Shown here one piece after another: positions 8,420-61,010 of a DNA stretch of 64,000 nucleotides. Position 1 is the stretch's first letter. Each line of letters starts with the position of its first letter. The stretch covers positions 60,140,001 through 60,204,000 of the forward strand of contig OZ296657.1 of assembly GCA_965655095.1 (NCBI GenBank). Direction: 5' to 3'. The position numbers and the translations under genes are program-made. The notes under the pieces were generated by a model. The model searched no databases. It saw only the letters and a program-made list of their open reading frames with translations, and had not been told where the DNA came from. This stretch comes from Haplodiscus bocki (lineage: Eukaryota).

Positions 8420-9735
8420 AATTCTGAGGGAAAAAATTGTCAGTTGTGAAGACTCATTTGATTTTTTTTCTTTAACAAGTCGTTGACCTCCTCTTTTTAT
8501 GAGGGAAAAGGGTTCAATTATAGCAAACAGTTAACGATGGAAAATTTGAGTACAATACCGAAAAGGCTACACTTTATAAAAATGTAATAGTATTTTTTTT
8601 CTCCTATTTATACCTTTTCCATGGCGGTAAACATAGTTTTTTACACGCCAAAGCAAGGTACAAGTAGAGAAAAGTACTTTAATCATAATATTTACAGAGG
8701 AAAAATGCCAACTCCGTCTGGAAATATACACCCTTCCGTCCGCTTTGCCCTTCGTAGAAGGCGTCCTTTCTATCTTTCGACAGAAAATTGTACGGGTCCA
8801 ATCCAGTAACAGTGGACATCAAAGTACTTATCCCCCCGCCGACACAATGAGTATTAACATAAACAATACATCAAAGAGATTTTCCATAAAAGGAAGGTAC
8901 TATAACAAGGCACCAAGCATTAAAAGAAAACATTAAATTTAAATATAATAAAATACATAAAAGCGATGCAAAGGTTCATGTTTACTTGTGTTTAAATCCA
9001 CTGCTGGGAACAAAATTTGGTTATTTCCTAATCCGCTCCTCATTTCCACTGGCCGGTTCTTCATTTTGGCCGAAGCCTTCCAGAACGACCAGGTAGACGC
9101 TTGTACCACTGCTCTCCGCAGTGCTACTGAGAGGAGTGAAATAGGTGACTACAAAACCATTCCGTGTTCCTCGAAAATGACACAGCGTAGTAGCAGAGAG
9201 GATTGGAAGATATTCTAGTGACGTCACCAGATTGGTTGCGACAGAACACATAGGAAACAAATTTTCACTTTTTAAGCCACGCTCTGAAGTTGTAGTTGTA
9301 ATAACTATTGCAAACTCCTTGACACTGTCAGTCTTGATACAGAAAACTGCAAAAATGAATGTAAAAAGATGGACTTACATAATAAATAGCTAAATTAGAT
9401 ATAACTATTCCACCTATTATTGATATAAATCTACGGTAGGGAAAACAAATGAATATCGGTTTGTTCCGTAGTTGCTCCGTCCTAGTCTATATCAGTGCAC
9501 CAGAATTGCACGTATAGGACACATGGCTTTTGAATGAAGTAATGAAAATGGAACCTTACGTAAACACTACGTATCGTTTACATGAAATAAAGTGTAATGA
9601 ATGGTATTACGAGTTTATTAGCATGTATGTGTAAAGTTTGAATTTGTCAAGAGTTTTAGTCTTTTTATGACGGGCCTGGAATGTCCTTTGCCGGGGAATT
9701 CTTTTGTCCGCAGGCTTCGCAGACGTGCTGCGACA
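8016..9735 (-). repeat. 5' LTR (~1.7 kb) of the Gypsy element
   Basis: Starts TGTCGCAG on the minus strand (aligns with 11011 tgtcgcagtatatccgcgaagcct) and ends CA before the PBS. Internal blocks such as tggtgacgtcactag and the gag N-terminus are shared with the other two LTRs. Confidence 0.85.
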
Positions 9736-11010: not shown

Positions 11011-12594
11011 TGTCGCAGTATATCCGCGAAGCCTAGGGGCATAAATAAAGATAACGACATCCCCGGAACGTCAAAAAAATAGAAAAAACTGAACGAAAAA
11101 TTTTAAACTTTTCTATTTCCATTTATATAATAATGTTGCAGTCATATATCAACGCCTTTATATGTAGTTGATACGTATCAAACACGTATCACTCCTCAGT
11201 AAATGTTCATGTAACTTCTAGGTAATTTTTAAGTAGCACTCCCGTGTACTGATCCAAATTGGGACGGAACTGTTACGGAACGGACACGTGTCTACCTAGT
11301 AGCTACACTAGGAGTGAAGATTTGATCCGTACGCGTTCCGTCGCCACCGATCTGGTGACGTCACTAGAAATGCAACCAATCCGCTGTGCTATTATGCTGT
11401 GTCAATTTGGACAAATACGGGACGGTTACGTAGCCACCTTTTTCATTCTTCTCAGTAGCACTGCGGCAAGCAGTGCTACAAGCGGTTGCGTAGTCGTTCC
11501 GGAACGCTTTGGCCAAATTTGGGAACCGACCTGTAGTAACGAGCAACGAACTAGGAAAAAGCCTAGTTTTGTTCCAAAAGTGGATTTATTCGATGCAACA
11601 TTATTTCCAAACATGTAATTATGATTTTCTATGATTCTTTTGGTGTATTTTACCTAACTTTGGTGCATTATTTAATTCTTTCTTCTTTTGGAAAATCTTT
11701 CTGATCATTTGTTTATGTTATTATTTATTGTGTCGGCGCGGGAATAAGCACTTTGATATCCATTTCCGACTAATCAGACCCGTATATTTTCCCTCGAAAG
11801 ATGGAAAAAACGCGGTCTGCAAAGGAAGAAATGGACGGATTGGTGTTTCTTTCCCGCCAGAGTCGGCATATTTCCTTTGTAATTATTATGACTAAAGTAC
11901 TTTTCCCTACATTGTACCTTTACTTGGCGTGTAAACAATTACGTTTCCGCCATGGAAAAGGTATATATAGGAGAAATGAAAGTACTAGAAAGAAGATTCG
12001 CAATATCATTTTCATTATCAGTTGCTTGTACTGATTGCGCCTAGTTGTTTATTCTAAAGAATCACATTTTTTTGTTATAATCTCAATTTGATTAACAAAT
12101 GAAAACTAATTCAGTCTTCATAACTCCGTAGCATTTTCCCTTCAAAAAAATGGCAACATTGAGAAACAAACGAAAGTTGGCAGCCGTTACAAGAGAAACA
12201 CAGAAGGAACATCCTAGGAACGGCGAGTCACGAAACACGTCCTTTACCAGAATTAACGAGGAATCTATCAAACAAATTTATGAGGAGATTGAAAGCAGAG
12301 TCACTAAAAAACTTTCACAGGAGTTCAGCAGGACAGAGTCCCGCATTTTAGGTGCTCTGTATAAATTAGACGAATTTCTCTTGAACCCACAGATACGAAC
12401 GCACTCCGGAACAGTTCCGGGAACATTCCGAAACACAAACGTGGAAAACTAGCGAACGAAATAGGATGACCCCCAGAGTGATCCTCATCCTGAAGCAGGC
12501 ATCTTCCGCAGCCACACTACACAAAACTCTGGTCCAGAAGTTGGCCGCAACATGGTGACAAGAGTTCAGAAAGAGAGTCTCTGCGGACATGACA
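11011..12594 (+). repeat. LTR of a second copy of the Gypsy family (3' LTR by PPT); end at 12552 or 12594
   Basis: TG start after the PPT. Homologous to 8016-9735 in the opposite orientation. Contains gag N-terminal ORF 12150-12452. CA|TGGTGACAAGAGT at 12551-12565, then a second CATGACA ending at 12594. Confidence 0.85.
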
Positions 12595-14874: not shown

Positions 14875-15623
14875 GTTCTGTTGGTTACATGGCTTTTAGC
14901 AAACACCTATAAAAATTAATATGCTGACAAAAACTGGGTTTTTGCTCGATGACATTTTCAAATCATTTCTATTAATTTTCCGGGTTTCCCCACCCAGTCC
15001 AGTCATCGTCTGGAGATAGAGTGAACCATAATAAAATAAAACATAATCGTATGTTAAAAGGTCTTGAAGCATAAATAGCATAGAATATAACCAATTCGAA
15101 ATCATGCCCTGACACAGCTTATGACTGAACTGGAATTGTTTTTACATCGCAATTGCCCCAGATGATTACGAGCAGCAGATAAAGTCGACAAGTAAGGAAA
15201 ACCGAGTCCTTATGTGTTGAGGGCTCGCACTTATTTTGAGACCCATAAGAAACTGATCTCTAGTACAAACTGTCTGGAGCTTTTTGGCAACAAAAATATT
15301 TCAAATAGTTCTCATAATTTTATCAATTGATCTACGGACGAATACCTCGAAATGTAGACCAAGTTTATGGAATCGATAACTGCTATCTTAAAACTTTAAC
15401 CCTTGAAGTTCACAGTAGCTGCAAAGGCTGCTTAGGTCTTAGATAATATTTAAGCGTTTGGCCTGTGGGTCCTAATTGCACTTTTCCGACGAAAAAAATT
15501 CACGGGGAAAATTGTCAGTTCAGTAGTCGGAGTTTTTTTTTCCTTTTCCTGCAATTGACCATGACGCGCAAACTTCGTGTCTGCAGAATCGTTGGCGACT
15601 TGCAAATTACATTTGTGCGGTGG

Positions 15624-17095
15624 CGAATCATGCCTCATCTGGGACTGAATTCATAGATTGGGGTGACAGATAGATGAAGGCACCTACTTCAGGAAGAAGA
15701 TCATTCTAGGAACGGTCTTCGTTTGGTTCCTAGTATTTTGTGTTAGAATTCAGGGTTGTTACTGGAAAAGGCGTGTGATTTCAGAAGAAAATCCTATAAC
15801 TTGGACAGAGAGCCCGGAACTCGGCTCTCTGTCCTTTTGAACTCCTGGGACCCTTTTTGTTTGTCACGCTGCTTTCTATCTCTTCTGACACCTGAATGAT
15901 GTAGTCCTCGTTCATTTCAGGAAAAGCTGTGTTTTGTGACTGGCTGTTCCTAGAGTATTCTCCCGGGCCTTCTCTAGCAACTTCTGCCAATTTGTTTTTG
16001 CTCCTCAGTGATGCCATTTTGAAGACAAAGACAATCGGATAGTGTTTAGAACTGGAATTTTTTTCTAATTTTGGTTCCAATTCGAGAGGAAACATAAATG
16101 TATAATATCTTAAGTCAAAATTGAAGCCACCAGTAACAACCAGAACAATTAATTCTTAAATTATTTGAACCTTAGTTTCTCCGATATACACCCTTTCCTT
16201 GGCGGGAAACATAATTGCTTACACGCCTAGTCAGAATATAAAGTAGCGAAAAATAATTTAAACATAATATTTACAAAATGAAAATGCCGACTCAGGCTGG
16301 AATTAGAACAGTTTTCTATCCATTTCCTTTCTCATTGGCCGAGTAGTCTCCATCTTTTGACAGAAAACTAAATCGTCGGAATTGAAAATCGAAGTGTTTA
16401 ATCCCGCGCTGACATCTGATATAGTAACAAAAACAATAGACGAAAGGCTTTCAATTTTTGGAAAAAAAAAACAAAAAGAATGTGCAGAAGAGTGATACAG
16501 CTGAGGAAAAAGTGTTATTAACAGCTGACTATGGTGATTGCATGTTTCACACAAAGAAGAAAAACTGTGCTGGTTCAAAACGGAACAATGGTAAAAGTGG
16601 AGAAAATCTAGGTGGAAACTAGCAGCGTTCCTAGTCTGTTCCTCATTTTACACAATCCGGAACGGCCTGATTTTCGATTTTAGCGCTGCTGAGAGTGGTA
16701 TTACCATGAGGCGAGAAAGAGTGAATTGGGAATTGTTCCGTAATTGGCTTTCCCAACACGGCCTGCTAAAATATTAATCTTTAATACTGACTGAATTGAC
16801 TGTGACGTCACAGGACTAGTAGCGACGATACACGTACGAACAAATACTCACTCCTAGACTCTATTTCGCTAGGCCACAGTTGCACTATAATTAATTCAAG
16901 GACAAGGTCAATTTAGTTGACTTTACAGCACTGTAGAAACACACAATCATACTCACGGATTACTTTACATGTTAAAGAAAAAGGAGTGTAATTGAATTTT
17001 CAAAGTGAAAAGCCAAGTTTCAGTTTACAGCGAGTCGTAGGATGTGCTTCTCATTGGTACTGGCTGCCCGCAGGTTCCGAAAATAAGATACGACA
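15624..17095 (-). repeat. Solo LTR of the same Gypsy family with a 4-5 bp target-site duplication
   Basis: Starts TGTCG on the minus strand at 17095, contains the gag N-terminus (MASLRSKNKL…) and the gtgacgtcac block. Flanked by ggtg(g) at 15619-15623 and ggtg(a) at 17096-17100. Excising it restores continuity with copy B of the host element. Confidence 0.8.
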
Positions 17096-17519
17096 GGTGA
17101 CAACGTGCATCGGTAACCCACAAGCAACGGTCTTGAATTTCGTTATCCGCTTTGATTGTTACATTGTTTTGGATACTCGTTAACATTTTCCCACTTTTTG
17201 AAAACAAAAACAAAAGAAAAGAACGGGGAGTTTTCGATTGAAAGTTTTCCGATAAGTAGTCGCTTTGTCTTCACGAAAAATATCCGTTTTCCGACGTACA
17301 TAAAACGAATTGTTCTTTTTTGAACATTTTGAAAAAGTTTTGCAAAATGATTTGGTTTCTTCGAACCAAACTTTTCATACTTTTTATATCAGATTTCAAA
17401 ACAAAATTACAAATGCAAGTAAACGATTCCTTCTGCATTTTTATATTAGTTTTTTTTCTCCGCTACCTCTGTGGTGAAACAAAACTTAGTTACTCCGAAA
17501 GACTTCTGTAAGAAGCCAT

Positions 17520-20500
17520 TGTTCTGTGATACCCAAACTGGGAGATGCCAAACAGCGCAAATAGTATTAATTATCCATGATGATAAAACTCATTTTTCTT
17601 GAGAAATGTACTATTCAATTCTTTCACCTAGGGTTCTTTCGAAATTTTTTTAACTTTCATAAGAATGTTCTCCTGAAAAGCAATGATTTTGTTCTCTGCA
17701 TCAGAATCCTGGAAGACCGGAAAAAACTACAAAGTGGCATTATTTTTGAAAAATCTCGTTTTGCATTTTTTTAGCTCCCTTTTGGCTTGTTCAACTGGCT
17801 TCATTGCTTCCATCAGTTTTTAAACAACGTTTTCGACTGTTTGAAAGGCTGTTCAAGTGAAAGGTTTTCCGACTAGTTTCCTGGCGTCTGAATGCTGATT
17901 ATTGAAATAACTGAATTAACAAAATAAAATGCGCTTTCTTTACATCAATCTCGTTCTTCAAACTCATAGTTCATATTAAACACAGGTTTATTTCGTTCCA
18001 TGAAATTCTGAATTGAAAGATTACAATTTGGGGCAAACTGGTCGGTTTTAAAGTTACTGTTTTTGTTGCTTCCACAAGAACCTAATAGCGAAGAATCACA
18101 TTAAGGTGCTAATACTATTGATTTACATCGATGAACCAGCTCTTGCATCTCCGTATCTGCTGGGGGCTTCTTTTAATCAAGGTTGAAATCGGAAACTCAG
18201 TTTTTTATGAGGGTGATCAGCTGAAGAATCCATGACTCTGTTCTTGCCATCAGAACCCTGACCGTCTGAAGGTTGCAAGTTAAAAATGAATGGTCTCCTT
18301 GTTCAAACTCAAGCTCCTGCATAACTAGAGGCTTGATTTTTCCATAAAAATTTCAGTCAAAAACAGTAGTTCAGGAAGGTCCATTTGAAAACCATCAGTA
18401 ATGAGCTATACATCATTACCCTGGTGGTTCAAAAAGCCAAGAAACTGACGGGGGTTGACATATCTCCACATAGAAAACCTTGTTCCTTCTTAACTAAAAA
18501 AAATACGATCTAATGAGGATACATTTGACGAGTTTCTGGTCCTAAAAATGTTCTTGACCAAAAAGATCATGGAATTTAATCACTGAGTTCCATTTTAGCC
18601 AACTCGAAAATGCCAAGAAGACTTGTTTTGGCTTCAACATTTTGTCGACAATCCAAATTGTTCAGCTCCCCAATCATAAACGTGAAAGGTTACTTCAAGG
18701 TTTCGATCGAACTATTTAAATGTGTGAGAAACTAGGTGAATGAAAAATCAATACTTTCGTTCGAGGCAGCCGAATCCCTCTAGTCTGAGAATTCCAAAGA
18801 GTCCACAAACTTATTGATTTTCAACCAAATTAAAACGCATATTTCCCGGAACTACAAACTTTACTCTACCAATCAAGCTCGCTATCTGAAAATGTATGTT
18901 CTTCCTCGAGTTGTCAATTTGAAATTTATTGGTTTTTGTAAGTGCATCGGAATACCGACTATCTGAAAATTCCCAAAATTGTCTTTGTTTTTGATTCATC
19001 TCAACTTTTGAGCGCATAATCTTCGGTTTTTGCCATCAACATCTCAAAACTTCAGAAGAGTATTGCGTCAGAAAAAACTGATTTGGTTCTTTGCATCAGA
19101 GACATTATGGCTTGAAAGCTCCAAAAAGTGCAAATGAAAGATGCTTATCCCTGTATTCAAAGTAACTTTTCCCTGTAAATTCGGGCTTCATTTTCTCCAT
19201 CATGGTCTCAGTCGGAAACTTCTCACTTTTAAAGTCGTGCTCAACTGAGTAAACATCACTTTTTACTCCTTGCATTAGGTTCACAAACACCAGCTAAACG
19301 AAATTTTTTTAACAGTTTCGTACAAAACTCAATTTTTAGACCCTTATCGTCCAGTTAAAATTAGCATGTTTTCTCCCAATGATTTCTCAAATCAGACTTT
19401 CAACCTTGTGGCGGCGTAAGTTTTTGAAAACTTTTGGTCTGGATAACGAAATGGTGTTCTGGATCATACGAAGTTCTAAGAATACGCTAAAGACGTTGAT
19501 TTATCTCCAGAATCCAACTCATACAACGTTACAGTTCCGAGTTTTGTTTCCTATATCGAACTCTTATTGGGATTTTTTCGTTCTTGCCGGAAAAACTGAC
19601 ATGAAAAAGATTGAATTTGATCTTTGCATTGGAATTTTGATGGGAAAACCTTCCTAAATAATAAAAAAGTTTTGATTCATCTCGACATGCAATTCAATAA
19701 TTTCCGTATCTACAAGCTTCAGCTTTTCCACCAACACCACAATCGAAAGCTTTAAAAATGTAGGGAAAAATTCGATTGAAGGAACATTTGTTTTTCTCCA
19801 CATCGGATTTTGATCGTCCGAATGTTCTAAGAAGTGCCATTAAAAAACTGATTAGTCTCGGTAATCGAATTTGTTTTTCATTCAAATCGTCAGACATCAT
19901 TTCTTTCATCAAGGTTTCTTTCTTGGGGGAACTACTTGATTTGAAATTGATTGATTCTCTTCTTCGCTTTGAAATGCTGATATATCGAATCTCCCCAAAT
20001 GTGCTATTAGTCTCTTTTCATCTCGCCATTCAAACTCATCTTTTTCATACCTACAGCTTTGATTTCCTCCAACCAGGTCCCAACAAAAGCCTTACACTTA
20101 TAAACGAGTAAACATATTAAAAATCAAAGCTTTTTTCTCTGGAACCAGAGTGCGTATAGACCGAGAAGTCCAAAAGTGCTATTTTTAGAGAAGAAATCTC
20201 AGTAATTCAACTTACTATTGTCCGTAACTACCAGCTTTAATTCTTTCATCAAACAATAGCCTTAAACTTTTGAGAAAAAAGTCACTAGAGAAATCATAAA
20301 CGTATTTTCCTGCAACAAAATTATGACAGTTCGAAACCCGGAGAAAGTTTTTTGTGAAAAATGTTATCTTGATTTTTGAATTCAACTTCCTCCGTAACTA
20401 AAAGCTCGATATCTTCTATCAAAATCTCAATCAGCAGCTTCATATTTGTAGAAGGACGTTCGAATAAAAGTTCTCAATGACATCTTCCTTGCATCATGTC

Positions 20501-23500
20501 CCAATGAACCGGGTAATGAAAGATGTGCCGATGGTTTTGCACAAACCTCATTTTCAGAGTATTTTTCTAGGTATCTGTTGGATTGCCTTATCTCATTGAA
20601 ATTTGAATCAAAATTTTCAAACATGGGGGTTGCTGAGGATTTGAAACATTGTCGTTTATGATCCTGAAAAGGGCAATTTGACGCTTCGAAAGTTTTCAAA
20701 AAAGCTGAAAACATTGATTTACCTGAAAAAAACCAGTTTTCCCATAACTAGAGGTTTCCTTTCCTATATCAAAGATTCAAGGTCTCAATCGGGAGCATCT
20801 TACTTAAAAAGGCGTGCTTTTTTCAGAAATAACCATTTTTCCCTCAGGTTGTGACACAGCGGTTAAACGAAAAAATGCCAGTAGTTTCAAACAAATCTCA
20901 GATTTCAGAAACTTATCGATCCGTTAAAAAGGGCTGTTTTTACTCCATCCACTTCTCAATCACAAACTTCATTTATATAGAGGCCCAAATTAATGAAACA
21001 TTGTCACTCTGGATACTGGCATGCGTTTCTTGATGATTTGCAATTCACGAAACGTGTTGAAAAAAGTATAACTATCTCCTCTCCTTAATTCAATTCATTG
21101 TTCCGTCAACTCCGGGTTTCATTTTCTGCCTCAAGATCTCAATGAAAAACCTGAAGTCTTTGGTGGATGAATTGTCATTAAAGAGAATGGTTTTGATATT
21201 TGCATTGGAGATCTGACGTCCAGAATTTCCCAACTGTGTTTTGATACAGGTTCAACTCGATGTTCAGAAAAATTTTGTCCGGAATTACAGGTACAATCTT
21301 TTTCATCAAGGTCCGAACCAAAAGCCTCAAACTTTTGAGAAAATTATCATTAGGATAACCATTGACTTTGTTCCTCGCAGCAGAAACACATAATTGATGA
21401 AAACCAAAAGTGCAAACAAATTTGACTCCCATCGATAATCAAACCCATGTTTTCCCTAACCACAAGCTTTTCTACTTCCATCAAGTTATCAATCCAACAA
21501 TTTTTGTTTTTGTCGATTTGTTCGAATTGAAAAAATTTGATTCCGATAAAAGCAACGGAATGCCGACTGTACCAAAAATCTCAAAAGTGCTATTTATTTT
21601 GATTCAACTCTCAAATCGACATTCGAAGGAAGTTTTTTTCCGTGACTTCAGTAAACAACTTAATCGAAATCTTTCCAAATCTAGAGAAATGTTCGATTGC
21701 AAAATCCCAGACATTATCCCCCACATCATATTTTTGATGGCTCGAGAAATCCATGAAGTTATTTCAAGCGAGGCTCATATCGGTAGTCAAACTCATGTTT
21801 TTCAGTAGTTACAGGCCTCACTTCCTCCATCGAGGCTTCAATTGAACAATATATGCTTCTAGTAGGCCAATAACTTCCAACTAGACTGATTTTGATCCTT
21901 GGATCAGATTCATGACTTTCCAAAAACTCCCAGCCATGCAAATGTTATTGGATCTTTTCCATATGCGACCACTTTAACTTGCCTAACTTCAGGTATGATT
22001 TTTTCATCATTGTCTCAAACGAAAGCCTTGGAAAAGTGAGATGGCTCATTGAAAGGTCATTCTTTCCCGGCAGCAGAAAATCGGTAGTCCAAAAAGTCCA
22101 AAAAAGGTGAATAATTTTAACTCATATTGATAAATAAACTCATGCTTTTGCGAAACCACAAACTTTTTTGATTCTATCGAGTCTTCCATCAAAAAACTTC
22201 TGTTTTGGCTGAGGTATTTGATTTGAAAATGGTTGATTTTGATACGTGCATCGGAATTCAGACTGTCCAAAAGACCCCGTAATTTCTAATATAAGCGATT
22301 CCTCTCGACTGTCGGACTCATATTCTTCTGTAACTTCCATCAATAACTCAATCCAAAACCTCACATTTTTAGAGGAGTAGTTGATCGAAAACTTATTGAC
22401 AGTATCCCCTGCATCAGACTCGTGAAGGCTCTTGATTTCCAAACAAGTGCTTTAAAACTGTGGTTATCTCAGTATTCAACCGCACATTTTCCCGTAATTA
22501 CAGGTTTCCTTTCCTCCATCAAGGCTTCAATCGAACCCCATCTGCTTCTGGCAGACTAGTCAAGTTGAAAAGAGTGATTCAGTTCCTTATATGTGAGTCT
22601 TGGTAGTCCGAAGGTTCCCAATCAAGCTAATAATATTGATTCATCATAAAAATCGAACACAATAATTTTCACCATTTCCTTCTTGACTTTTTCCATCAAC
22701 ACCTCAAATGAAAATCACTCAAATGCACGCAGACAATTTTTTGAATACCGTTGATTTTTTTGCTGCATTACAACTTGACGGTCTCAGTATTCCCAGAATT
22801 GCTTTTAAAAACTATTTATTTCTGCCATCAAGCGCACCTTTTTTGTGACTGCACGTCTAATTTTTCTACCAAGATCTGATTGGAAAGTGTTTCAATTGTA
22901 GAGGTATAATTTACCGAAAAATCACTGTCTTTTTTGTCTTGTGCATCGGACTCTTGTTGGTTCAAAAATTCAAAATTGTGCTTTGGAACTAAACTCATCT
23001 CGGTGTCCAAACTCAATTTTTTTCCGTAGGTGTAGCTTTCATTTCTCCCGTCAATCTCAGAGTCTAAAGCTTTATGATTTTGGAGGACCATTCCATTGAG
23101 AAACAATGCCTTTGTTGTTTTGGATGAGAGTTTAAATGGTACGATTTTTCCAACAATAGCAATTAGAAACGATTTGTTTCAGTTTTCAAAGTCCTAGTTT
23201 ATGCGTAACTGCAGGCCCAAATTCTTCTATGAGGTTTTCAACTGAAAACATTCTCTTTTTCGTGGACTACTTGATTTAAAAACGGTTGGTTTGGTTCCTT
23301 GCATCGGAATCATGAAACACCAATTTTTCTGAAATGTGAAGTCAGAATTGATTCATCTAAGCTCTCACTTCCATTTTAAATGCACTTTCAATGACACCTT
23401 TGATTTTTTTTCAACAAAGTCTTGATTGAAGAATTGTTGTTGACATATAATTCGATTGAAGACTTTTCCTTTTTTTTCGCATCAAACCCTCTCATTCCGA

Positions 23501-24350
23501 ATTTTACCAAAAATGCAAACGAAAAAATTTTTTCCCAATTTCGTAAGCTTCCACAATTACAAGCATTTCTCTTCTATCAACAAACCAATCAGAAACTTCA
23601 TTTCTCTGGGACTACGAAATTTGAAAAGGAATAAATCTGTTGCAAATATCCGAATCTTGACAACTCGAGATACCAAGAAAGTCTTCGAACAATGATTCAC
23701 CTTGATACTCAAATTCGTCTTCGTCTTCCTCGGAAATGGTAGGCTTACTTTTTCTAGTCAAGGTCTCAATCAGACTCTTTCTACCTGCAGCAAATGGTGG
23801 CATAAGAAACGATCAATTCCGTTTTTTTTGCGTTGATATCCCGTTACTGCAAAAAGTGACAATAAAACAGTTCCTTCTCGTTAATCGAAATCACCTTCAT
23901 CTATACTTGCAGGCTGGATATCTCCATCGAAGTCGCAATCAAAACTTCAGATTTTCACAGGAGTTTCGGAACAAAAATTTATCGATGTATTCCATGCATC
24001 AAATCCTTTCACAGTGGGCACACGAACATGTGCCAAAAGTTTTGTACACAGTTCAAATATCAGATTCTTGCTTTTCGGTAATTTCTGACTTGACTTCTCC
24101 CATCAAATTCTCAATCAACAGTTTTAAGCAAGTGCCTGGAGAACCAATGAAGTTCTTGACGTCAAAATCCTGATACACCGAATTTGCGATGATATCTTTT
24201 ATTATTGACTTAATCCGATTTCGAAATTCATATTGCTAAGGAAACACAAGCTTGATTTCCATCTTCAAGATCTCATTCGGAGTCACTCTACTTGTAGAGG
24301 AGTGTTCGATTAACGATCTATAAGCCCGTTTTCTATCGGAATCCAAACCA
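17520..24350 (-). repeat. Highly diverged tandem array, period ~165-180 bp (mode ~177), roughly 39 units
   Basis: Motif cttgcatc(g/a)ga(a/t)tc recurs near 21898, 22067, 22246, 22409, 22585, 22763, 22942, 23120, 23298, 23478, 23645, 23830, 23994, 24170 and 24333, and similarly from ~17700. A second motif ttccatcaag recurs in phase. Confidence 0.8.
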
Positions 24351-24565
24351 TCAAAAAATGCCCGGAAAAATTTTAGTTTTGATTTGTTGTTCCAACAATC
24401 TTTTTTGTGCTTCTTTGATGGAAAACAAGGCACTTTGACTGCACTTCGTTTTCTTGGCTCCACTCAATAATCAGGAGCGTGTTTTATTTAAACAAAAAGG
24501 CGTTCAATTGTATAAAAAAAAGATGAAACTCTTACACTGCTTTCAGTTTGAAAGATGCCATTTAA

Positions 24566-24830
24566 CCCTGATCAAAGTTTCAGAGATACTCAGCACTGAG
24601 CAAAACTGATCAAGAGAACAAGAACGATATCAGTGGCAATCAGAGTTGTGTACACTGAACAGCTGTGTTTTTCTCCGCGGTCAGCGTTGCTCGCAACTGA
24701 AGAAAATACAGCACTGATCAGCGTTCGGAAACACTGTTCCCGGGACAATCAGCTCTGAAACGGTTGTGATCGGCGCTGATTTTCGTAGTTCTGAAAAATG
24801 TTTTAGCGCTCAACAGTGTTGATTTTGGAA
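24566..24830. repeat. Degenerate MITE-like sequence built from CAGC(A/G)CTG palindromic motifs
   Basis: Repeated tcagcactga / cagcgttg / cggcgctga / tagcgctca motifs. Termini not resolved. Confidence 0.45.
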
Positions 24831-27800: not shown

Positions 27801-28029
27801 TCAAGGAAATCACAAATAAGATCGTCCCATGCTACTCCACAGAGCCTCTGAACCACGAGCTAATAAAGTAGCACTGGACGAAACCAATATCGCTACTTTA
27901 CATTGAGATAGGCATCCCTAATGGTTAACGCAACTGCAATTGTTATTACTTTGCGTCATATTCTTTAGACGTCACCTTCCTCTCAAATTGGTTCCTTTTT
28001 CTTACCCGATGTTTGCCAATTGAGCTCGC

Positions 28030-28820
28030 ACTAAACACGATGTTGGCTCGCGTCGTGAATTTTTTTCCCAAGATTGCCAAAAAAACCAAATTGGCCGAAA
28101 AGGCCAAAATGGCCAAAAAGACCAAGATGGCCCAAATTGCCGAAATGGCCACAATGGCCGAATTGACCATAACGGAAAAAAATGCCGAAAATGCCAAAAT
28201 GGCCGAAATGGCTAAATTTGCCAAAAATTCCACAATCGCCAAAAATGCCCATTTTCACAAATTGGTTGAGATTGCCAAAATATCCAAATTGGCCAAAATG
28301 GCCAAAACGGCCAAAAAGGCCAAAACGGCTAATATTGCCACAATTGCCAAATTTGTCAAAAACGCCAAAATGGCTGAAATGATTAAAATTGCCAAAAGTG
28401 CCACAATTGCCAAATTTTCCAAAATTGCCACGATTGCCAAGATTGGCAAGGTTGCCCATATTGCCAAGATTGCCCATATTGCCGAGACTGAATTTGTAAG
28501 ATATCTCGAAAAGTTCAGAAAATGGGCCTTTTTTTGAGAAAATAGATGGTTTTTTCGAGAAAAGACTTGAATTTCATGAAAAATCGCTAAAGGTGGCATA
28601 TTTGCTGTAAAATGCGAATCAAATGGTTTTAGTTCTCAGACGTGTCTTTTGCCCTATATATTTAGTTTTTTAGCAAAAAATCACCAAACTCTGAACGTTG
28701 GAAGAATTAGAAACTATGATGAATAAAGTGTGTTTTTTCGAAAAAAAAGTTTTCATCTTTTTAAAAGCCTTCTTTACAAAACATTTACAAAAAAATACCG
28801 GTGGTAGCCGGCCGTCTTGT
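28030..28820 (+). mobile_element. Non-autonomous Helitron/Helentron-like element with a 9-bp minisatellite core
   Basis: 5' imperfect palindrome cacgatg…cgtcgtg. Array (aa[t/a]tg/ggccaa)n at ~28070-28485. 3' GC-rich hairpin ccggtggtagccgg followed by CTTGT. No TSD evident. Confidence 0.55.
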
Positions 28821-36360: not shown

Positions 36361-37755
36361 CACGATATATCGTCGTGTCAGAAAAGAAAGGAACCTTTAT
36401 TTGTGAAATAATAATGGGACGCTACCCATACTTGCGTGATGCTCAAAAACAACTGAAAATCACAAATTATGTTTGAAACAAAAGTTTCATAGAATTTTAT
36501 CTAGTTTACAATGGTGATTTTTTTGAAACTTCTAGGATCATTATTATGGAAGTAAGAAGATTTTGCACTTCTATGTATTAAGATAGGAGGTTGATATTGC
36601 ATCACAACTTTTGATGTTTTAATTACCTTCTACTCCGTTTTTGTTTACATTTCATATACTGTCAAGATGCCCCTCATCTATTGATTACACTCAGAAATTG
36701 GCAGCTCCCCAGTGCTTACACTATCAAACTACATACGGTAGTGATTTTAATTAATGCGACTAAGCAATTTTGATACGCTCTACAAAATCCTAAGTGGAAA
36801 GATAAATAATAGGAGATCAGAGTAAACACAGGTACTCTGAGAAAGCTCTTTAAAAAAGCTACCACATGGTTAATTCATTTGCCAAAACAAGTACTTCAAA
36901 GAGGTAGAAAATCGCGTTCCAAAGTTGAGTAAAAGAACTATTCAAGCATTGGGAATATTGACTAATTGGCAATTTTCGTAAAAAATCTTGACATTGACGC
37001 ACAATAGCAAGAAACAAATTATCAAATTAAGCAAATAGCAAAAATTTGTCAGTTTTGGTTTATCCCCAGAGCTTTTATTTCTAACACTTTTTTCACAACT
37101 TTGAATTTTTAGAAGAAATTGCAAAAAGTAAAAGTATAATTTTAACATCCTATTTTAATACGTTGATTTTCACATTTAGTAGATTCAAGATGAATTTTGG
37201 AATAGTTTTTGAAAATTTTTCTGCCGACAGATGACATCAGCTGTCTCAGAAACATCAAAAGCATCTGTTGATCAAACAAATTTCCATAAATAATTTTTTA
37301 AGTTACGAAATTCTCAAAAAATGGAAAATTCGGCCAAAAACGCATTTTCTAGTTTTTGCTCTAATCGTTAGATACTTTTCAAACGAACACCATTACAATC
37401 TCCTAAAAATTCAAAGAATGTTTTGTTTCTGGTATTTTTGTCCAAAATGATTATTCCCGAAGTTATTCGTCCTCAAAGTTGACTTATGCATTACAGTTGT
37501 CGCATTATTTAAAATCACTACTGTAGACATTTCTTGAGAAAAAATCATTCCCAATGTTAATACGTTGTAAAGGGTGTGATTTCATTAGAGAATGTCTATA
37601 TATTTTGATTCTGAGTGTAATCAGTAGATGAGGAGCATCTTGACAGTATATGAAATGTAAACAAAAATGGAGTAGAAGGTACTTAAAAACATCAGTAGTT
37701 GTGATGCAAAAATCAACATTCTATCTTAATTTCTTAATTGATAATTGATCTCTTA

Positions 37756-37955
37756 NNNNNNNNNNNNNNNNNNNNNNNNNNNNNNNNNNNNNNNNNNNNN
37801 NNNNNNNNNNNNNNNNNNNNNNNNNNNNNNNNNNNNNNNNNNNNNNNNNNNNNNNNNNNNNNNNNNNNNNNNNNNNNNNNNNNNNNNNNNNNNNNNNNNN
37901 NNNNNNNNNNNNNNNNNNNNNNNNNNNNNNNNNNNNNNNNNNNNNNNNNNNNNNN
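37756..37955. other. Assembly gap (200 N)
   Basis: The round length suggests a scaffolding join of unknown true size. Confidence 0.99.
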
Positions 37956-39261
37956 AAACTGGATGCGTTCAAGTAAAATTCGAAATCTTTTTTGCCAACC
38001 AGTATATGTTAAGTTTATCAAGCGTTCCCAAAAGAACACTGCTGGTGAAGTACCCCATTTAGAGATTTTGTTCAGGTTCATCGGTATACTGTCTTTTCTT
38101 TCTCGACGGAATTTACCAGAATAATCGATCTAAGGATTCAAACCTCTTTGGTAATGGAACGGGGGTATGTTGATTAGATCTTTCAGACACGATATCAACA
38201 ATTTGGAACGTTTTAGGTTGTAGTACACCAAAAAGCTCGTTTGCTTAAACTTAGTAACAGCTCTCTTATTTTGTCCAGGTTGTTGATTGCAACACACCCA
38301 TACAACACACACTGCGAGTTAATGGAAGTGGAAGGATTGAATTTAAACATCTAACATTCTGTAGCTTTTTTTTCACGTTTGAGAAGTTTTGAATTCAGTC
38401 ATTTAAAAGAATAGCTCAACTTCATACGTAAATTTTTCATGGGAAACACAAGTTTGTATTTCACATGTAGTCTTTCATACGATGATATCATGAAACTGTG
38501 AACGATGAAAAAAGTGATATGTTCGATGCTTTCAAGGAACATTAAAGCAAATTTAATAGAAGAAGTTATTGAAAAATTCGATGAAAACAAAAGTTGAAAA
38601 GTGTTTTTTGAAAAATCAATAATTATTAGGTTTTAGTTTTCTTTTTAGTTTTAACAAGTAATTGATTTCTTCTTTTACCAAAAAAACAGCATTCAAACTG
38701 TCAAAAAAGAGCCTCTTTGAGAACATTTTTTTCGAAATTAAACTTTAATACTGATGAATTTTGATTTAAAAGCAAATAACACAAACATCACCTGGAAAAA
38801 AATTAACTAAAAAACTAGGTTTTTTTCCGACTGAACAATGGCTTTGTTTAGAAATGAAATAAGCATGAAGAGCCATTATGAAAATGGAACACGCAAAAAA
38901 AGCCACAGGGACCTTCCACGAGATCCTCAAATGTGAAGGGTGGAGGTAATTATGCTATTAGTTAATTATGAAAACTAATTAGATGGTATTACCACTAAAA
39001 GTAAAATATTGAATTTAAAAATAGTTCTCAACACAGCATCTATCAAACGACAAATCTGTAATGCAAACTACATTACAATATTTGAAAGTTCATAACTCCA
39101 GTCAAAAACAACAAAAACCTAAAATGGCAAAAGAATTATTAACATTGATGCCCCCTATCAAATAAACTTTTGACACGACAATGCATAGCTGAGAAACAGT
39201 CGCGCTCGTTTACTTCACGATTACGTAATTTGACCGTTTTTAAAGACATTGCTAGACAAAA

Positions 39262-40062
39262 ATGGCTAACTATGACTTCCAAAAAGCATTAAATTTGATC
39301 GAAAATTCCAATTTAAAGGCAATTATGCAGCATTTACTTAAAAAATTAGAGGAGAAGGACGATCAAATTCGGTTATTAACCAACCGTGTGGTGGATTTGG
39401 AGCAGAGGGTGAATGAATGTGAGAAGTATTCTTCGAAAGATAGTATCATTTTTGACAATTTACCTCTGCGAAATGATAATACTCCTCTGTCTCACCAGGT
39501 ATGTGACTTTCTTCAAAAATATTTGAACTTCACCACGCACCCACAAAATTTCAAAGCGTGCCATGTGTTGGGAAAGTGGAAGGACACAAATTCACCACCA
39601 GGAGTAATAATAAAGTTTTTGTATTACGGTGAAAAAAATGAAATATTCGGTCGCAAATCTTGGTTGGCTGGGATCAGAAACCCTCTCAATGGGCGTCCAA
39701 TATTCATGAAAGAACGGCTCCCCCCTCTTCAGCGAGAAATTAAAAAGGAAGCTGACCAACTTGGATTAATAACAACTACTATGAACTGTGATGTTAAAGT
39801 TTTCAAAAAGTCAGATGACAATAAATTCATGCCCATTGTTGTGAATTCTCTGAAAGCTGTGCACGACATCAAAAACACTGCTGTTAAACGAGCTAACCGT
39901 GGAACAAAGGACAAACCGCCAGTCAACCACACTCCCTTGCTTACATGTGGTACTTCAAAGCGTCCTCGCTGCTCCCCTGGTGATGGGAATATTGAAAAAT
40001 TTGCATGCATCGAGAGTTGTACGAAAGCCAAAACGGATATCCATAATTGCGGTCAAACTTAA
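39262..40062 (+). CDS. LINE ORF1 protein (coiled coil plus RRM-like domain)
   Basis: Intact 266-aa ORF. Heptad region LKKLEEKDDQIRLLTNRVVDLEQRVNECEKYS, then SIIFDNLP, ACHVLG, GVIIKF and IFMKERL, as in L1/CR1-type ORF1 RRM-CTD. Confidence 0.85.
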   Translation: MANYDFQKALNLIENSNLKAIMQHLLKKLEEKDDQIRLLTNRVVDLEQRVNECEKYSSKDSIIFDNLPLRNDNTPLSHQVCDFLQKYLNFTTHPQNFKACHVLGKWKDTNSPPGVIIKFLYYGEKNEIFGRKSWLAGIRNPLNGRPIFMKERLPPLQREIKKEADQLGLITTTMNCDVKVFKKSDDNKFMPIVVNSLKAVHDIKNTAVKRANRGTKDKPPVNHTPLLTCGTSKRPRCSPGDGNIEKFACIESCTKAKTDIHNCGQT

Positions 40063-40088
40063 GATAAAGTTTTTGATTTAAGCTATAA

Positions 40089-45109: not shown

Positions 45110-47829
45110 ATGACAATGAATGGCAAAAAATAGGGAAAAAATTGATATTCGTTCTTTTCGCATTTTGTTTCGTCATAAACTGCAGCTGTGTGAAGTTTTG
45201 TCTTGAATCCTCATCCGTCCATGAAACATTCAGTTTCAGCGGAAGGAACTCCAGACTGCGGGAACAACGGTCCATAAATCTGAAAAACCGAAGCAAAAAG
45301 AAACATTATCATCCGAAACTCCCAACAAAAGGCGCAGTCACACTGCTGCAATTTTTTCCGTCAAGGATGCACAGAAGTGATAGATTGAACGTACAACAAG
45401 TGATTTTGAAAATAAAGCCCTTCTTGAGAGAAAAAATGTTGTCGATGGAGATTTTGATTGCAGAATACAAGTCACTATACGAAAAACAAACCAGGGAATA
45501 TTCAATAAAAGAGTCATGTAGTAGTATCAAAGCTTCAATTCAGAACTTGATACAAAAATTCAAAGGTGTAGTTTTCCAGAAAGATAATTTTGAAATATGT
45601 CTGAGAGAGAAGAACTTTCGCCACTTTCGGCCAATCAGAACTCCAATTCCGATGTAGAAATCAGTTTGGAAGACTTTTAGGAACGAACAACCCGTTTCAG
45701 GTAAAAAGCTATCGAGATTGGTACCCTGATGGAAAAAAAGGATATAGGTATTTTTGAAGAAGTATAATTTTGAAGACCGGGTAAGTCATGACTAAAAGCA
45801 CTTTTGGCAATTTTGGTTCATCAAGAATCCACAGCAAGGTATACATTCAAAGTTTTCTTCTCAAATTTTCTAACTTAAGTAGGAACTAATTGACTGAGAG
45901 TATGAAGAAAGACATTGAGCTGGTAGTTATGGCGAAACCCGGGTTAGAAGACTCAGTTTTGAAAATTACTTGTTAAATTTGTTGGACTATCAGAAGTCAA
46001 TCACGAGGCACAGGAAAAAAAACTTTCACCACTAGTTTTTTTCAAAAGCCGAAGTTTTTCGATTGAGACCTTGGTGGAAGAAACGAAGCCTGCAGTTAAG
46101 GGTGACAAATGAAGATGAATTTGAATATCAAGAAATCTTGTCTGAAGGAATTTTTTTAAAAGTTTCACGTCATCACGAATCTGATGCAGCGAACAAACTC
46201 AACAGTTTTTCATCTAAGTGCTGCTCCAAAAATGTTATGTTTTGAATTGAGTTCTTGATGTACGAATTCCAACTGGTAGTGATTGAAGGATACAAGTTCG
46301 AAAATTGAGCGAAAGAAAAAATATAGCATTTTTTGGTAACTTCGGAATGTCAAAACTCTGACGCAAAGAACACAAATCGACATGTTCTCCATCGCAAAAG
46401 TCTCTATATGTAAAAAATTTTCATTTCCCATCCTGATGGAAGAAGGAAAGCCTGTATTGTTGGAGAAAAATGAGTTTGAAAAGCGAGAGAAATCAAAATT
46501 AAACAGTTTCTTGAGGGATCAAATTAATCAGTTTGATGCAAGGGAGAAAGTCATTTCTTTTTGAATCGAACAATCATCTTTGAGTGATGAGTTTCCGACC
46601 GATATCTTGATGGAGAAAAACGAAATTGTAGTGGCTGCGATTTAAAAGTCTGAATATCGATCCATACCATCAAGAAAATCATTTTTCGGAATGTTCGGAC
46701 AGTCATAAATCTGCTGCATGGATCAAAACAAAACATTTGTTATTTAAACCATTCTCTGCAAATGGAACGTTTTTGATTGAGACCTTGGTTGGTGAAGTCA
46801 TACCTGTAGTCACGGAAGACGATGAATTTGATTAACGAGACAAATCCATGTTATTATACATTCATGAAGCTTCTGATTATCTGAAACATAACAGAAGGAT
46901 CAGAAGTAATGGTTAATCAATCGAATCATCCTCCACAAATGTCAAATTTCCAACTGGGAGTTTGATGGAAAGTACCAAGCTTGTAGTGGTTGAGAAAAAA
47001 CTGTCTAAAATATTGAAGAAATAATTTTATTAACAGCAATTTTCAAAAATTATGACTATCAGCATTCTGTTGCAAGGAGTACAATTGATACTGCTCCAAT
47101 GGAACAGTTCACTACACAAAAAAGAACCTAACCGAGATCAAGATTTCATGTTTAAATCAGTATTTTTCCGGGACAGAGAGTTTGAAAACTAGAAAATTCA
47201 ATAACAATCGGGCTTTTTGGCATTATCTCAGTGTCGACGGCAAAGAACGATATGATGCAGCAGACATTTTTTGAATGAGATATGAATTTTTTTCGTTGGA
47301 TAAATTAGGATAGAGAAAAAACCAATACACAAACATAATAAGAATTAGTTGACTTCCTTATCCTTATAAAAAAACTCAACAAACTTTTGAAGACATTTAA
47401 CGCATAGACTTTTTTTCGGTTTTTACAAGAAAATCAAAACTTTTCCTCAGTTTTTGAAACAATATTGGAAAAATCAATTCATTTCAGTTGCGTCGGAAAA
47501 AAGGTAAATTTTCAGAAAGAAAACATTTGAAAAACTCGTGGAACTTTGTCGAAAAAACCCTAAGTCTTCCTATTAAAAGACAAGATCGTGTTAACGCGTA
47601 TCTAAAGAGACATTTAAAATTACAGTCCAAAACAGGAGTTGAACCCACCACCTCCCGCTTCTGAGCCGCAGTCACTAGCGACACATGTAATTTTAAGACA
47701 CCAAAGACTCTGCAGATTTGCACTCTTCGCGCCATGGGCAGTTTCAGGGAAAAAAAACGCTGACTATTGAATTGAATATTTTCTTCTCGAAAAAACCTTT
47801 TCGACGAAAAACAGTAAACCAACACACAG
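45110..47829 (+). mobile_element. Unclassified dispersed element, copy B, with ~10 units of the ~177-bp array
   Basis: Motif gaatc(t/c)gatgcaagg recurs near 45826, 45991, 46173, 46351, 46529, 46704, 46885, 47060 and 47230. Both flanks are homologous to copy A. Left boundary approximate. Confidence 0.75.
47626..47690 (-). other. Degenerate tRNA-like segment (B-box) inside element copy B
   Basis: GGTTCAACTCC at 47635-47645 (minus strand) preceded by gggaggtggtg. No full cloverleaf. Confidence 0.35.
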
Positions 47830-60535: not shown

Positions 60536-60795
60536 CCGCTCAATGTATTAAGATAGGGTATAGTTTGGCTCAATGTATTAAGATAGGTTATAGTTTGGCC
60601 CAAGGTATTAAAATAGGGTATAATTCGGCCTACTGTATTAAGATAGGTTATAATATGGCTCCTCAATGTATTCAGATAGGGAATAGTTCGGCTCAATGCA
60701 TTAAGTTAGGGCATAGTTCTGCAATGTATTAGGCTACGGTAAAGTTAGGCAATGTATAAGGATAGGGTATAGTTCGGCAATGTATTAGGACAGGC
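60536..60795. repeat. ~30-bp tandem repeat (gctcaatgtattaagatagggtatagtttg), 8-9 copies, in the putative Polinton TIR
   Basis: Directly visible. A related unit lies at ~60365. Confidence 0.9.
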
Positions 60796-60925: not shown

Positions 60926-61010
60926 TTTTTCATTACGCGGGCGGATAATTTATTGAGCGTGTGGATATTTTATTACGCGTGCGGATATTTTACCACGCGT
61001 GCGTATACTG
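60926..61010. repeat. ~20-bp tandem repeat (ttttattacgcgtgcggata), about 4 copies
   Basis: Directly visible. Confidence 0.85.

What the first reader, a model, noticed from the sequence alone, without database searches (positions are those of the whole stretch)
15463..24465. Unclassified dispersed element carrying a variable-length, cryptic ~177-bp tandem array (copy A; copy B at 45110-47829)
Seen: about 7 kb of apparently featureless sequence has a hidden ~177-bp period. The same array appears in the opposite orientation 21 kb away with only ~10 units. The non-repetitive arms on both sides are also shared; for example ccatgacgcg…tctgcagaatc…aaattacat (15558) matches the reverse complement of 47685-47736, and the 24340-24465 arm matches 45320-45400. 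Inference: this is one mobile unit (arm, tRNA-like segment, AT-rich spacer, array, arm) whose core expands and contracts, a possible vehicle for seeding satellite arrays. I cannot assign it to a known superfamily, and no clear TIR or TSD is visible.
Basis: partly seen in the sequence, partly recalled or inferred. Interest (0 to 1): 0.72.

Follow-up and report, generated by a model that had tools for sequence, protein, structure and literature searches.

The report
Rolling-circle transposon carrying decayed repeat array
The "featureless" 9 kb is one old copy of a very common non-coding rolling-circle (Helitron-like, type 2) transposon with a long, decayed 177-base tandem array inside it, a known kind of element and not a new class.

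Summary
Copy A (about 15479-24455, +) contains 38 head-to-tail units of about 177 bp. Copy B (about 45324-47814, -) contains 11-12 units. Tandem Repeats Finder misses the arrays because units are only about 50% alike, but autocorrelation and a unit profile find them.

The two copies belong to a dispersed family of roughly 3,000-3,500 copies in this 1.5-Gb animal genome. The layout is always the same: left arm, T-arm-like hairpin, spacer, array of 8-38 units, right end.

The ends are not featureless. They carry a 12-bp inverted repeat at the 5' end and near the 3' end, a second complementary repeat beside the 5' one, a hairpin after the 3' repeat, T-rich boundaries and no visible target duplication. 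These are the published marks of non-autonomous Helentron/Helitron2 (HLE2, "HINE") elements, which are already known to carry satellite-like arrays.

What I add:
- Arrays were already heterogeneous in the active elements and were copied as blocks.
- Unit number changes by gain or loss of whole units.
- Copy A also holds a nested, unrelated repeat.

The autonomous partner was not linked.

The parts
15479..24455 (+). Copy A, complete element (about 8.97 kb including a nested foreign repeat)
   Evidence: The sharp 5' and 3' homology limits are shared with other copies. Both flanks (15300-15478 and 24458-24640) are single-copy in the genome.
15479..15629 (+). Copy A left arm. It holds the 5' subterminal inverted repeat (15481-15492, CTTTTCCGACGA) and a complementary inverted repeat a few bases downstream.
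   Evidence: About 80% identical to at least 40 scored copies. The left-arm profile hits 15482-15624 with E=6e-38. Per-copy feature table.
15630..17078 (.). Nested insertion of an unrelated high-copy repeat that interrupts the left arm
   Evidence: Homology to canonical left arms breaks at 15624 and resumes at 17079/17159. The insert has 4,705 first-look candidates genome-wide, with matches of about 1.3 kb at about 70% identity starting sharply at 15630.
17079..17161 (+). Rest of copy A's left arm, with a degenerate T-arm-like hairpin block (about 17125-17160)
   Evidence: Left-arm profile positions 124-205 match here, E=1.5e-4. In canonical copies the block is a hairpin of the form GGTAGCGGG-TTCGAAT-CCCGCTATC. 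Only the 17-nt T-arm matches a tRNA-like model.
17162..17616 (+). AT-rich spacer of copy A; a weak first unit starts at 17457
   Evidence: Short matches to canonical spacers at 17159-17216 and 17284-17323. Weak unit hits at 17229-17599.
17617..24431 (+). Array A: 38 head-to-tail units of about 177 bp (range 162-187), non-coding
   Evidence: nhmmer unit profile. Autocorrelation. Stops are equally dense in all six frames and conservation has no 3-periodicity. Internal block duplications: units 22-25 with 26-29, and units 10-14 with 19-23.
24380..24455 (+). Copy A right end: truncated last unit, 3' subterminal inverted repeat (24415-24426, TTGATGGAAAAC), hairpin (24430-24442, GCACT-TTG-ACTGC; the 5-nt arms pair at 4 of 5 positions), T-rich tail
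   Evidence: Right-end profile E=4e-9. Alignment of 3' ends. Feature table.
45324..47814 (-). Copy B, complete element (about 2.49 kb)
   Evidence: Left-arm profile hits 47813-47616 (E=3e-50) and right-end profile hits 45456-45323 (E=2.6e-25). Feature table.
45395..47320 (-). Array B: 11-12 units. It is colinear with the arrays of copies L035 and L040: units 0-4 in register, then a 2-unit offset.
45324..45364 (-). Copy B 3' subterminal inverted repeat (45364-45353), hairpin GCAGT-GTG-ACTGC (45346-45334) and tail GCCTTTTGTT (45333-45324)
   Evidence: Sequence read directly. Alignment of 3' ends. Zero stem mismatches.

Best explanation
Both stretches are dead copies of one family of non-autonomous Helitron-like elements of the second group (HLE2: Helentron/Helitron2; such passengers are called HINEs).

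SHOWN
- The element has fixed ends. The 5' end carries a 12-bp repeat (ATTTTCCGTCGA) with a complementary repeat beside it. The same 12-mer is inverted just inside the 3' end and is followed by a 5-bp-stem hairpin and a T-rich tail.
- Between the ends lie a conserved arm with a T-arm-like hairpin, an AT-rich spacer, and a tandem array of non-coding 177-bp units in fixed orientation.
- The family has about 3,000-3,500 copies.
- Arrays were already heterogeneous (units roughly 65% alike, my estimate) in the active source elements and were copied as blocks.
- Unit number then changed by gain or loss of whole units and by multi-unit duplications. Copy A grew to 38 units this way.
- Copy A was later hit by another transposon.

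INFERRED from published knowledge of the class
- Copies were mobilised in trans by a Rep-helicase of an autonomous HLE2 element that recognises the terminal repeats and the 3' hairpin.
- Insertion occurs between T's without a target-site duplication.
- The array is passenger DNA, and its size changes arise by unequal exchange or replication slippage.
For: - Array reality.
- Fixed architecture: all 11 arm loci fetched show arm, then array, in the same orientation. Arrays start at a fixed offset from the arm.
- Sharp shared 5' and 3' limits, and the terminal structures, are present in all 8 complete copies examined. The hairpin stem has 0-1 mismatches in 7 of 8.
- Copy A's flanks are unique in the genome.
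- Copy number: the left-arm 19-mer (up to 2 mismatches) gives 2,884 matches against 5 for the reversed control. The right-end 28-mer (up to 3 mismatches) gives 3,502 against 0. Both strands and all chromosomes are represented.
- Published definitions that these features match: PMC4067079 (subTIRs, a nearby IR, a 3' stem-loop, TT insertion, strings of T at the boundaries, central repeats), PMC7492417 (HINE modules, 140-180-bp monomers, fixed orientation, no TSD) and PMC11417382 (canonical HLE2: 12-16-nt TIRs plus a stem-loop after the right repeat, T|T insertion).
- Block inheritance: colinear orthologous units are 0.65-0.73 identical on average (up to 0.85) while units within an array are 0.52-0.55 identical. 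Chain scores exceed order-shuffled controls. For L027-L042, spacer identity is 0.73 and orthologous-unit identity is 0.726.
- Possible partners exist: DUF6570 and Helitron_like_N lie in single open frames of 1,971-2,225 aa.
Against: - No autonomous element with the same termini was identified.
- No empty site was found, so T|T insertion and the lack of a TSD rest on inspection of about 8 complete copies.
- The microsatellite typical of DINE-1 and Cg_HINE left arms is not seen.
- The terminal repeats of individual old copies carry 1-5 mismatches.
- Repbase and Dfam were not available.
Confidence: 0.85

Rival explanations
1. A non-autonomous canonical Helitron (HLE1), not HLE2.
For: The hairpin lies about 10 nt from the 3' end, as in canonical Helitrons (PMC4067079). 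Some copies start with TC. The genome has many Helitron_like_N hits.
Against: The 3' end has no CTRR (it ends in CTCTTGTT). Terminal inverted repeats are present. The boundaries are T-rich and not A|T.
Confidence: 0.05
2. A cut-and-paste MITE or foldback-type element with internal tandem repeats, moved by a DDE transposase.
For: It has short inverted repeats near both ends and is non-coding. DINE-1-like elements were long misfiled as MITEs (PMC4067079).
Against: The right repeat is subterminal, with a hairpin and tail outside it. No TSD is visible in 8 complete copies.
Confidence: 0.05
3. A tRNA-derived SINE (retroposon) with an internal array.
For: A conserved hairpin with the B-box-like loop GGTTCGAATCC lies in the left arm.
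Against: ARAGORN finds no tRNA in the window or in 10 other copies. Rfam matches only a 17-nt T-arm. The block lies about 170-190 nt from the 5' end. There is no A/T or simple-repeat tail and no TSD. 5' ends are uniform and not truncated.
Confidence: 0.02
4. A tandem hammerhead-ribozyme 'retrozyme', or a decayed gene encoding a 59-aa repeat protein.
For: The unit size (177 bp = 59 codons) fits both ideas. Retrozymes occur in invertebrates (bioRxiv 10.64898/2026.07.22.740005, seen; title and abstract only).
Against: No hammerhead or any credible Rfam match at E<=5 in array A or in five better-preserved arrays. Stops are equally dense in all six frames, no frame stays open through the units, and there is no 3-periodicity. 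No Pfam hits for the longest ORFs.
Confidence: 0.02
5. A local inverted duplication, not a mobile family.
For: Two copies lie in opposite orientation 21 kb apart.
Against: There are thousands of copies on all chromosomes. Copies A and B are no closer to each other than to copies elsewhere: A-B arm identity is about 70% while A's arm is about 80% identical to others, and the A-B unit chain score is 0.08.
Confidence: 0.01

Closest known systems
Cg_HINE elements of the Pacific oyster, and related bivalve elements (Pearl, DTC84, MgE): Helentron non-autonomous elements carrying satellite-like arrays (PMC7492417)
   Same: Left module with a 5' subTIR and a complementary IR; variable spacer; central array of 140-180-bp monomers in fixed orientation; short right module with a 3' subTIR followed by a palindrome; T-rich insertion sites; no TSD; thousands of dispersed copies; autonomous partner unresolved there too.
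   Different: Arrays here are much longer: 8-38 units, against mostly 5 or fewer there (longest 29). Units here are much more diverged: about 45-50% pairwise difference, against 8.5-21% monomer diversity. No left-arm microsatellite is seen here. A T-arm-like hairpin is present here ('tRNA' does not occur in that paper's text). Sequence relatedness was not tested because no reference sequences were at hand.
DINE-1 / HINE families of Drosophila, mite and mosquito (PMC4067079)
   Same: 13-bp-class subTIRs, an IR a few bases from the 5' subTIR, a 3' stem-loop, strings of T at the boundaries, and central repeats that can make up about half of the element.
   Different: DINE-1 has a conserved core and a microsatellite. 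Several of those families were tied to an autonomous Helentron at more than 95% identity. Here no partner was tied.
Canonical HLE2 structure as defined for HELIANO (PMC11417382)
   Same: [quoted passage not shown] The genome holds DUF6570+RepHel frames, which that paper names as the HLE2 marker.
   Different: Whether the partner belongs to the endonuclease-bearing (Helentron) subgroup or another HLE2 subgroup is unknown.

Membership tests
HLE2 non-autonomous element (HINE) | Short inverted repeats at the 5' end and near the 3' end (11-16 nt) | tested here: met
   The 5' repeat is ATTTTCCGTCGA and the 3' repeat is TTGACGGAAAAT; the consensus forms are complementary at 11 of 12 positions. Both are present in 8 of 8 complete copies, with 1-5 mismatches per old copy.
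HLE2 non-autonomous element (HINE) | Inverted repeat complementary to the 5' subTIR a few bases downstream | tested here: met
   ATTTTCC...GGAAAAT with a 7-12-nt gap in all copies. A one-base offset inflates the mismatch counts.
HLE2 non-autonomous element (HINE) | Palindrome or stem-loop after the right repeat at the 3' end | tested here: met
   GCAGT-GCG-ACTGC, with 0-1 stem mismatches in 7 of 8 copies, followed by the tail GCCTCTTGTT. The 28-mer spanning the repeat and the hairpin occurs 3,502 times against 0 for the control.
HLE2 non-autonomous element (HINE) | Insertion between T and T, with strings of T at the boundaries and no target-site duplication | tested here: inconclusive
   Boundaries are T-rich on both sides and no direct repeat longer than 2 bp flanks the 8 complete copies. 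No empty site was available: copy A's flanks are unique in the genome.
HLE2 non-autonomous element (HINE) | Central tandem repeats in fixed orientation relative to the ends (frequent in the class, not obligatory) | tested here: met
   11 of 11 arm loci. Full copies hold 8-28 units, and 38 and 11-12 in the window.
HLE2 non-autonomous element (HINE) | Microsatellite in the left module (typical of DINE-1 and Cg_HINE) | tested here: not met
   The left-arm alignment shows only A/T runs. TRF finds no conserved microsatellite there. The mite HINE scheme in PMC4067079 does not include one, so I treat this feature as non-defining.
HLE2 non-autonomous element (HINE) | An autonomous HLE2 (Rep-helicase) element in the same genome sharing the left and right terminal sequences | not tested
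   HLE2-type frames exist: DUF6570+Helitron_like_N in open frames of 1,971-2,225 aa. Their flanks could not be fetched.
Canonical Helitron (HLE1) | 5' TC, 3' CTRR after a hairpin, insertion between A and T | tested here: not met
   The 3' end is CTCTTGTT, the 5' start is mostly TTATTTTCC, and the flanks are T-rich.
tRNA-derived SINE | tRNA-like head with A and B boxes at the 5' end, a 3' tail, and a TSD | tested here: not met
   No tRNA by ARAGORN. Only a 17-nt T-arm match. No tail or TSD.
Non-LTR retrozyme | A hammerhead ribozyme in each tandem unit | tested here: not met
   No hammerhead match at E<=5.

The most novel reading that the evidence does not exclude
The array may not be mere passenger DNA. 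The active lineage carried an ordered series of old, distinct 177-bp units for a long time, kept their length (162-187 bp), and kept several conserved blocks inside each unit. That could mean the periodic blocks do something for the element, for example multiple protein-binding or chromatin-phasing sites that aid its replication or its silencing. My test could not separate this from uneven mutation rates. Conserved columns are also slower in dead orthologous copies: 0.22 against 0.355 mismatch. That ratio (0.62) is similar to the one for paralogous units (0.57).
Probability: 0.1. Interest if true: 0.6.

Novelty: new member of a known kind. Interest (0 to 1): 0.3.

Why it matters
The practical value is for annotation. 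A family of about 3,000-3,500 copies, probably several Mb in total, is invisible to Tandem Repeats Finder and easy to mistake for a fossil repeat-protein gene or an unclassified element. Its termini and unit profile now allow it to be masked and counted.

It also gives a clear example that a rolling-circle passenger can carry a long tandem array through many rounds of transposition while the array decays. Old arrays inside such elements therefore need not be satellites that grew in place. Array length still changes by whole units, which is the raw material assumed in published models of satellite birth from HINEs.

Tried and rejected
1. CODING REPEAT (59 aa) OR EXON PLUS MINI-INTRON UNITS. The left arm of both copies starts with an ATG and translates into similar peptides, which briefly suggested paralogous first exons. 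I rejected this: stops are equal in all frames, no frame is open in unit register, there is no 3-periodicity, there are no Pfam hits, and the arm is a repeat with thousands of copies.

2. HIGHER-ORDER (DIMERIC) REPEAT, suggested by stronger autocorrelation at 2x and 4x the period. Unit identity is nearly flat with lag across 12 arrays: 0.527 at lag 1, 0.532 at lag 2, 0.523 at lag 3, 0.533 at lag 4. Rejected.

3. CRYPTIC ONLY BECAUSE COPIES DECAYED AFTER INSERTION. This is partly true. Orthologous units are far more alike than units within an array, so much of the heterogeneity predates transposition.

4. UNITS AS DEGENERATE COPIES OF THE 3' TERMINAL MODULE. The last unit runs in register into the right end. 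The terminal 48 nt score 7 against the unit, with a shuffled mean of 7.0 and a fraction at or above the observed score of 0.56. Not supported.

5. SELECTION ON CONSERVED BLOCKS INSIDE UNITS. Inconclusive.

6. WHOLE tRNA. Rejected.

7. HAMMERHEAD RETROZYME. Rejected.

8. EMPTY-SITE TEST THROUGH THE FLANKS OF COPY A. The flanks are unique, so no paralogous empty site exists.

9. TAXON LEAD FROM THE NEIGHBOURING LINE REVERSE TRANSCRIPTASE. Uninformative.

STEPS NOT DONE
The first batch was cut to 10 kb, so minus-strand loci lack their arms.
I reran it with the consensus derived from stored alignment files.
Full report

Tandem Repeats Finder, even at minimum score 30, reports no array with a period near 177 bp anywhere in the window. 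The periodicity is nevertheless there.
- Base autocorrelation peaks at lags 177/178 in 17.5-24.4 kb.
- In 45.6-47.3 kb it peaks at 178, 352, 530, 707 and 886, with z of about 4-5.6. Control stretches show nothing comparable.
- A sliding test confines the signal to about 18.0-24.0 kb and 45.5-47.0 kb.
- A unit profile, seeded from five 179-bp slices and iterated with nhmmer, converges on 38 regularly spaced units on the + strand (17617-24431, spacing 162-187 bp) and 11-12 units on the - strand (47320-45395).
- Units are about 47-52% identical to each other within an array, which is why TRF and ordinary BLASTN miss them.

2. THE ARMS

- Left arm: 15482-15616 matches the reverse complement of 47811-47681 at about 70% identity, score 46.
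- Right arm: the pairwise match (24389-24457 vs 45390-45322) scores 22 and is no better than shuffles, whose maximum is 23. A right-end profile built from other genomic copies still hits exactly there: 24380-24450 (E=4e-9) and 45456-45323 (E=2.6e-25).
- The window holds only these two copies.

3. NOT CODING, NOT A KNOWN RNA

- Stop codons are equally dense in all six frames.
- No frame stays open when stops are mapped in unit register.
- Column conservation shows no 3-periodicity.
- The longest ORFs have no Pfam match.
- Rfam gives nothing at gathering score.
- No hammerhead or other credible hit appears at E<=5 in array A or in five better-preserved arrays. This excludes the retrozyme idea raised by a paper seen.

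4. A DISPERSED FAMILY WITH FIXED ARCHITECTURE

The window lies on contig 10 of a 1.5-Gb assembly. A LINE-type element and CpG observed/expected of about 0.85 point to an invertebrate-type animal. Other agents' notes call it probably a coral; I did not test this.

- The left arm has 1,525 first-look candidates. All 40 scored are about 80% identical over window 15482-15624.
- In all 11 other arm loci fetched, an array of the same units starts about 0.5-0.65 kb downstream of the arm in the same orientation.
- Whole-genome motif counts: 2,884 matches for a left-arm 19-mer (up to 2 mismatches; reversed control 5) and 3,502 for a right-end 28-mer (up to 3 mismatches; control 0). Both strands and all chromosomes are represented.
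- Complete copies are 2.2-3.8 kb with 8-28 units.
- Copy B is 2.49 kb with 11-12 units.
- Copy A is 8.97 kb with 38 units plus a nested foreign repeat.

5. TERMINI AND CLASS

Homology among copies starts and stops at single positions. Copy A's outer flanks are unique in the genome.

- The 5' end reads T[T/C]ATTTTCCGTCGA, then a run of A/T, then TCGAAAGGAAAAT. This is a 12-bp repeat with a complementary repeat beside it.
- The 3' end reads TTGACGGAAAAT-ATC-GCAGTGCGACTGC-GCCTCTTGTT. This is the same 12-mer inverted, followed by a hairpin with a 5-bp stem and a T-rich tail.
- These parts are present in all 8 complete copies scored. Individual copies carry 1-5 mismatches in the repeats, and the hairpin stem has 0-1 mismatches in 7 of 8.
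- Flanking DNA is T-rich, and no direct repeat longer than 2 bp brackets the copies.

This is the published structure of Helentron/Helitron2 non-autonomous elements:
- subTIRs, an IR 3-22 bp from the 5' subTIR, a 3' stem-loop, TT insertion with strings of T at the boundaries, and central repeats (PMC4067079);
- the HINE modules and 140-180-bp monomers of the oyster elements, with fixed orientation and no TSD (PMC7492417);

The canonical Helitron marks (5' TC, 3' CTRR, A|T insertion) are not met.

The genome encodes HLE2-type enzymes. DUF6570, which PMC11417382 names as an HLE2 marker, lies about 1.3 kb upstream of Helitron_like_N inside single open frames of 1,971-2,225 aa. I could not fetch those loci, so the partner is not linked.

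6. THE 'tRNA-LIKE SEGMENT'

Canonical left arms carry a conserved hairpin of the form GGTAGCGGG-TTCGAAT-CCCGCTATC.
- Its loop is the classic T-loop/B-box sequence.
- Only 17 nt match a tRNA-like model (E=0.0065).
- ARAGORN finds no tRNA in the window or in ten other copies.
- The hairpin folds well in about half of 17 copies and is decayed in the others.
- Copy A retains a degenerate version at about 17125-17160.

7. COPY A'S LONG SPACER

Homology to canonical left arms breaks at 15624 and resumes at 17079. The inserted 15630-17078 is another high-copy repeat: 4,705 first-look candidates, matches of about 1.3 kb at about 70% identity, with a sharp start at 15630.

8. HOW THE ARRAY EVOLVED

- Unit identity within arrays is about 0.52-0.55 and nearly flat with lag, so there is no higher-order repeat.
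- A naive same-index comparison shows little positional orthology.
- Unit-level chaining does find colinear series between particular copies. L027 and L042 match across all 15 units of L027, with a 2-unit indel. L035 and L040 match with a 4-unit indel. Copy B matches L035 and L040 with a 2-unit offset. Chain scores exceed order-shuffled controls: 2.19 against a maximum of 1.27 for the best pair.
- For L027-L042, orthologous units are 0.726 identical and the spacer is 0.73 identical, while units within either array are 0.52-0.54.
- Arrays were therefore already heterogeneous in the source elements and were copied as blocks. My rough back-calculation puts units at about 65% alike at that time. 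Length differences arise from gain or loss of whole units inside the array.
- Copy A carries two old multi-unit duplications: units 22-25 with 26-29, and units 10-14 with 19-23. Run scores are 11.1 and 10.3, against a permuted 95th percentile of 7.7. This accounts for part of its extra length.
- Copy A has no close colinear relative in my sample of 11 other arrays.

9. TESTS THAT GAVE NO ANSWER

- Conserved blocks inside units could reflect function. Conserved columns are also slower between dead orthologous units (0.22 against 0.355 mismatch), with a similar ratio to that for paralogous units. Uneven mutation rates or alignment quality explain the blocks equally well.
- The last unit runs in register into the right end, but the terminal 48 nt are not significantly similar to the unit.

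10. VERDICT

Its statements that the element is unclassified and that no TIR is visible are not. This is a new family of a known kind, an HLE2 (Helentron/Helitron2-type) non-autonomous element carrying a satellite-like array.

It differs from described HINE families in its long arrays and in the age and heterogeneity of those arrays. The role of such elements in spreading satellite-like repeats is already a published idea (PMC7492417), and I did not test it here.

An earlier follow-up of this scan on another piece of this genome (s1-376449) reached the same class for a ~175-bp internal repeat. I arrived at the class from the termini before reading that note.

11. LIMITS

- No reads were examined.
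- No Repbase or Dfam comparison was possible.
- The genome sample is small: about 20 loci, chosen by similarity of their arm to copy A's arm. This inflates arm identity (0.83) relative to the spacer (0.55-0.64).

Noticed in passing
window 39262-43076 (+): LINE-type retrotransposon: three consecutive ORFs of 266, 587 and 404 aa, with Exo_endo_phos endonuclease and RVT_1 reverse transcriptase. The reverse-transcriptase match is split between the second and third ORF.
   Followed up: partly
window 15630-17078: The repeat nested in copy A is itself a very abundant family: 4,705 first-look candidates, about 1.3 kb, about 70% identity, with a sharp 5' start. Its class is unknown. A 104-aa ORF on the minus strand has no Pfam match. 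Part of it (16176-16305) is about 78% identical to 8598-8726.
   Followed up: partly
window 28068-28483: A 9-bp minisatellite (CCAAAATTG, about 46 copies, 66% matches) lies inside a 174-aa ORF (28013-28537) that has no Pfam match.
   Followed up: no
window 8588-9269 and 11313-11987: Inverted pair, 74.7% identical over 688 bp, about 2 kb apart. It may be two copies of another transposon or one element with long inverted ends.
   Followed up: no
window 36577-36696 and 37609-37730: A 120-bp inverted pair at 91% identity lies just before the 200-N assembly gap (37756-37955). I left the gap untouched.
   Followed up: no
window 38735-39170 / 49550-49980 and 43240-43531 / 49991-50288: Direct matches at about 67% identity join both flanks of the LINE to one place near 49.5-50.3 kb. 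This suggests a second, internally deleted or solo copy of the same or a host element.
   Followed up: no
window 60534-60794 and 60928-61007: Two short tandem arrays: a 30-bp unit x8.8 and a 20-bp unit x4.
   Followed up: no
L003 (G000:C1:96898349-96901490): One left arm has arrays on both sides in opposite orientations. A second, arm-less array starts about 220 bp from the arm. These may be two elements head to head, or a rearranged copy.
   Followed up: no
G000:C3:103471830-103475454 and C3:103482801-103486424: Two copies of the family lie 11 kb apart on the same strand, with the same left-to-right motif distance (3.57 kb). This is probably a segmental duplication that includes the element.
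   Followed up: no
G000:C1:147368506-147370407; C6:63146617-63147957; C2074:9264-11165: DUF6570 and Helitron_like_N lie in single open frames of 2,203, 2,225 and 1,971 aa without stops. These are apparently intact HLE2 Rep-helicase genes and so candidate autonomous partners.
   Followed up: partly
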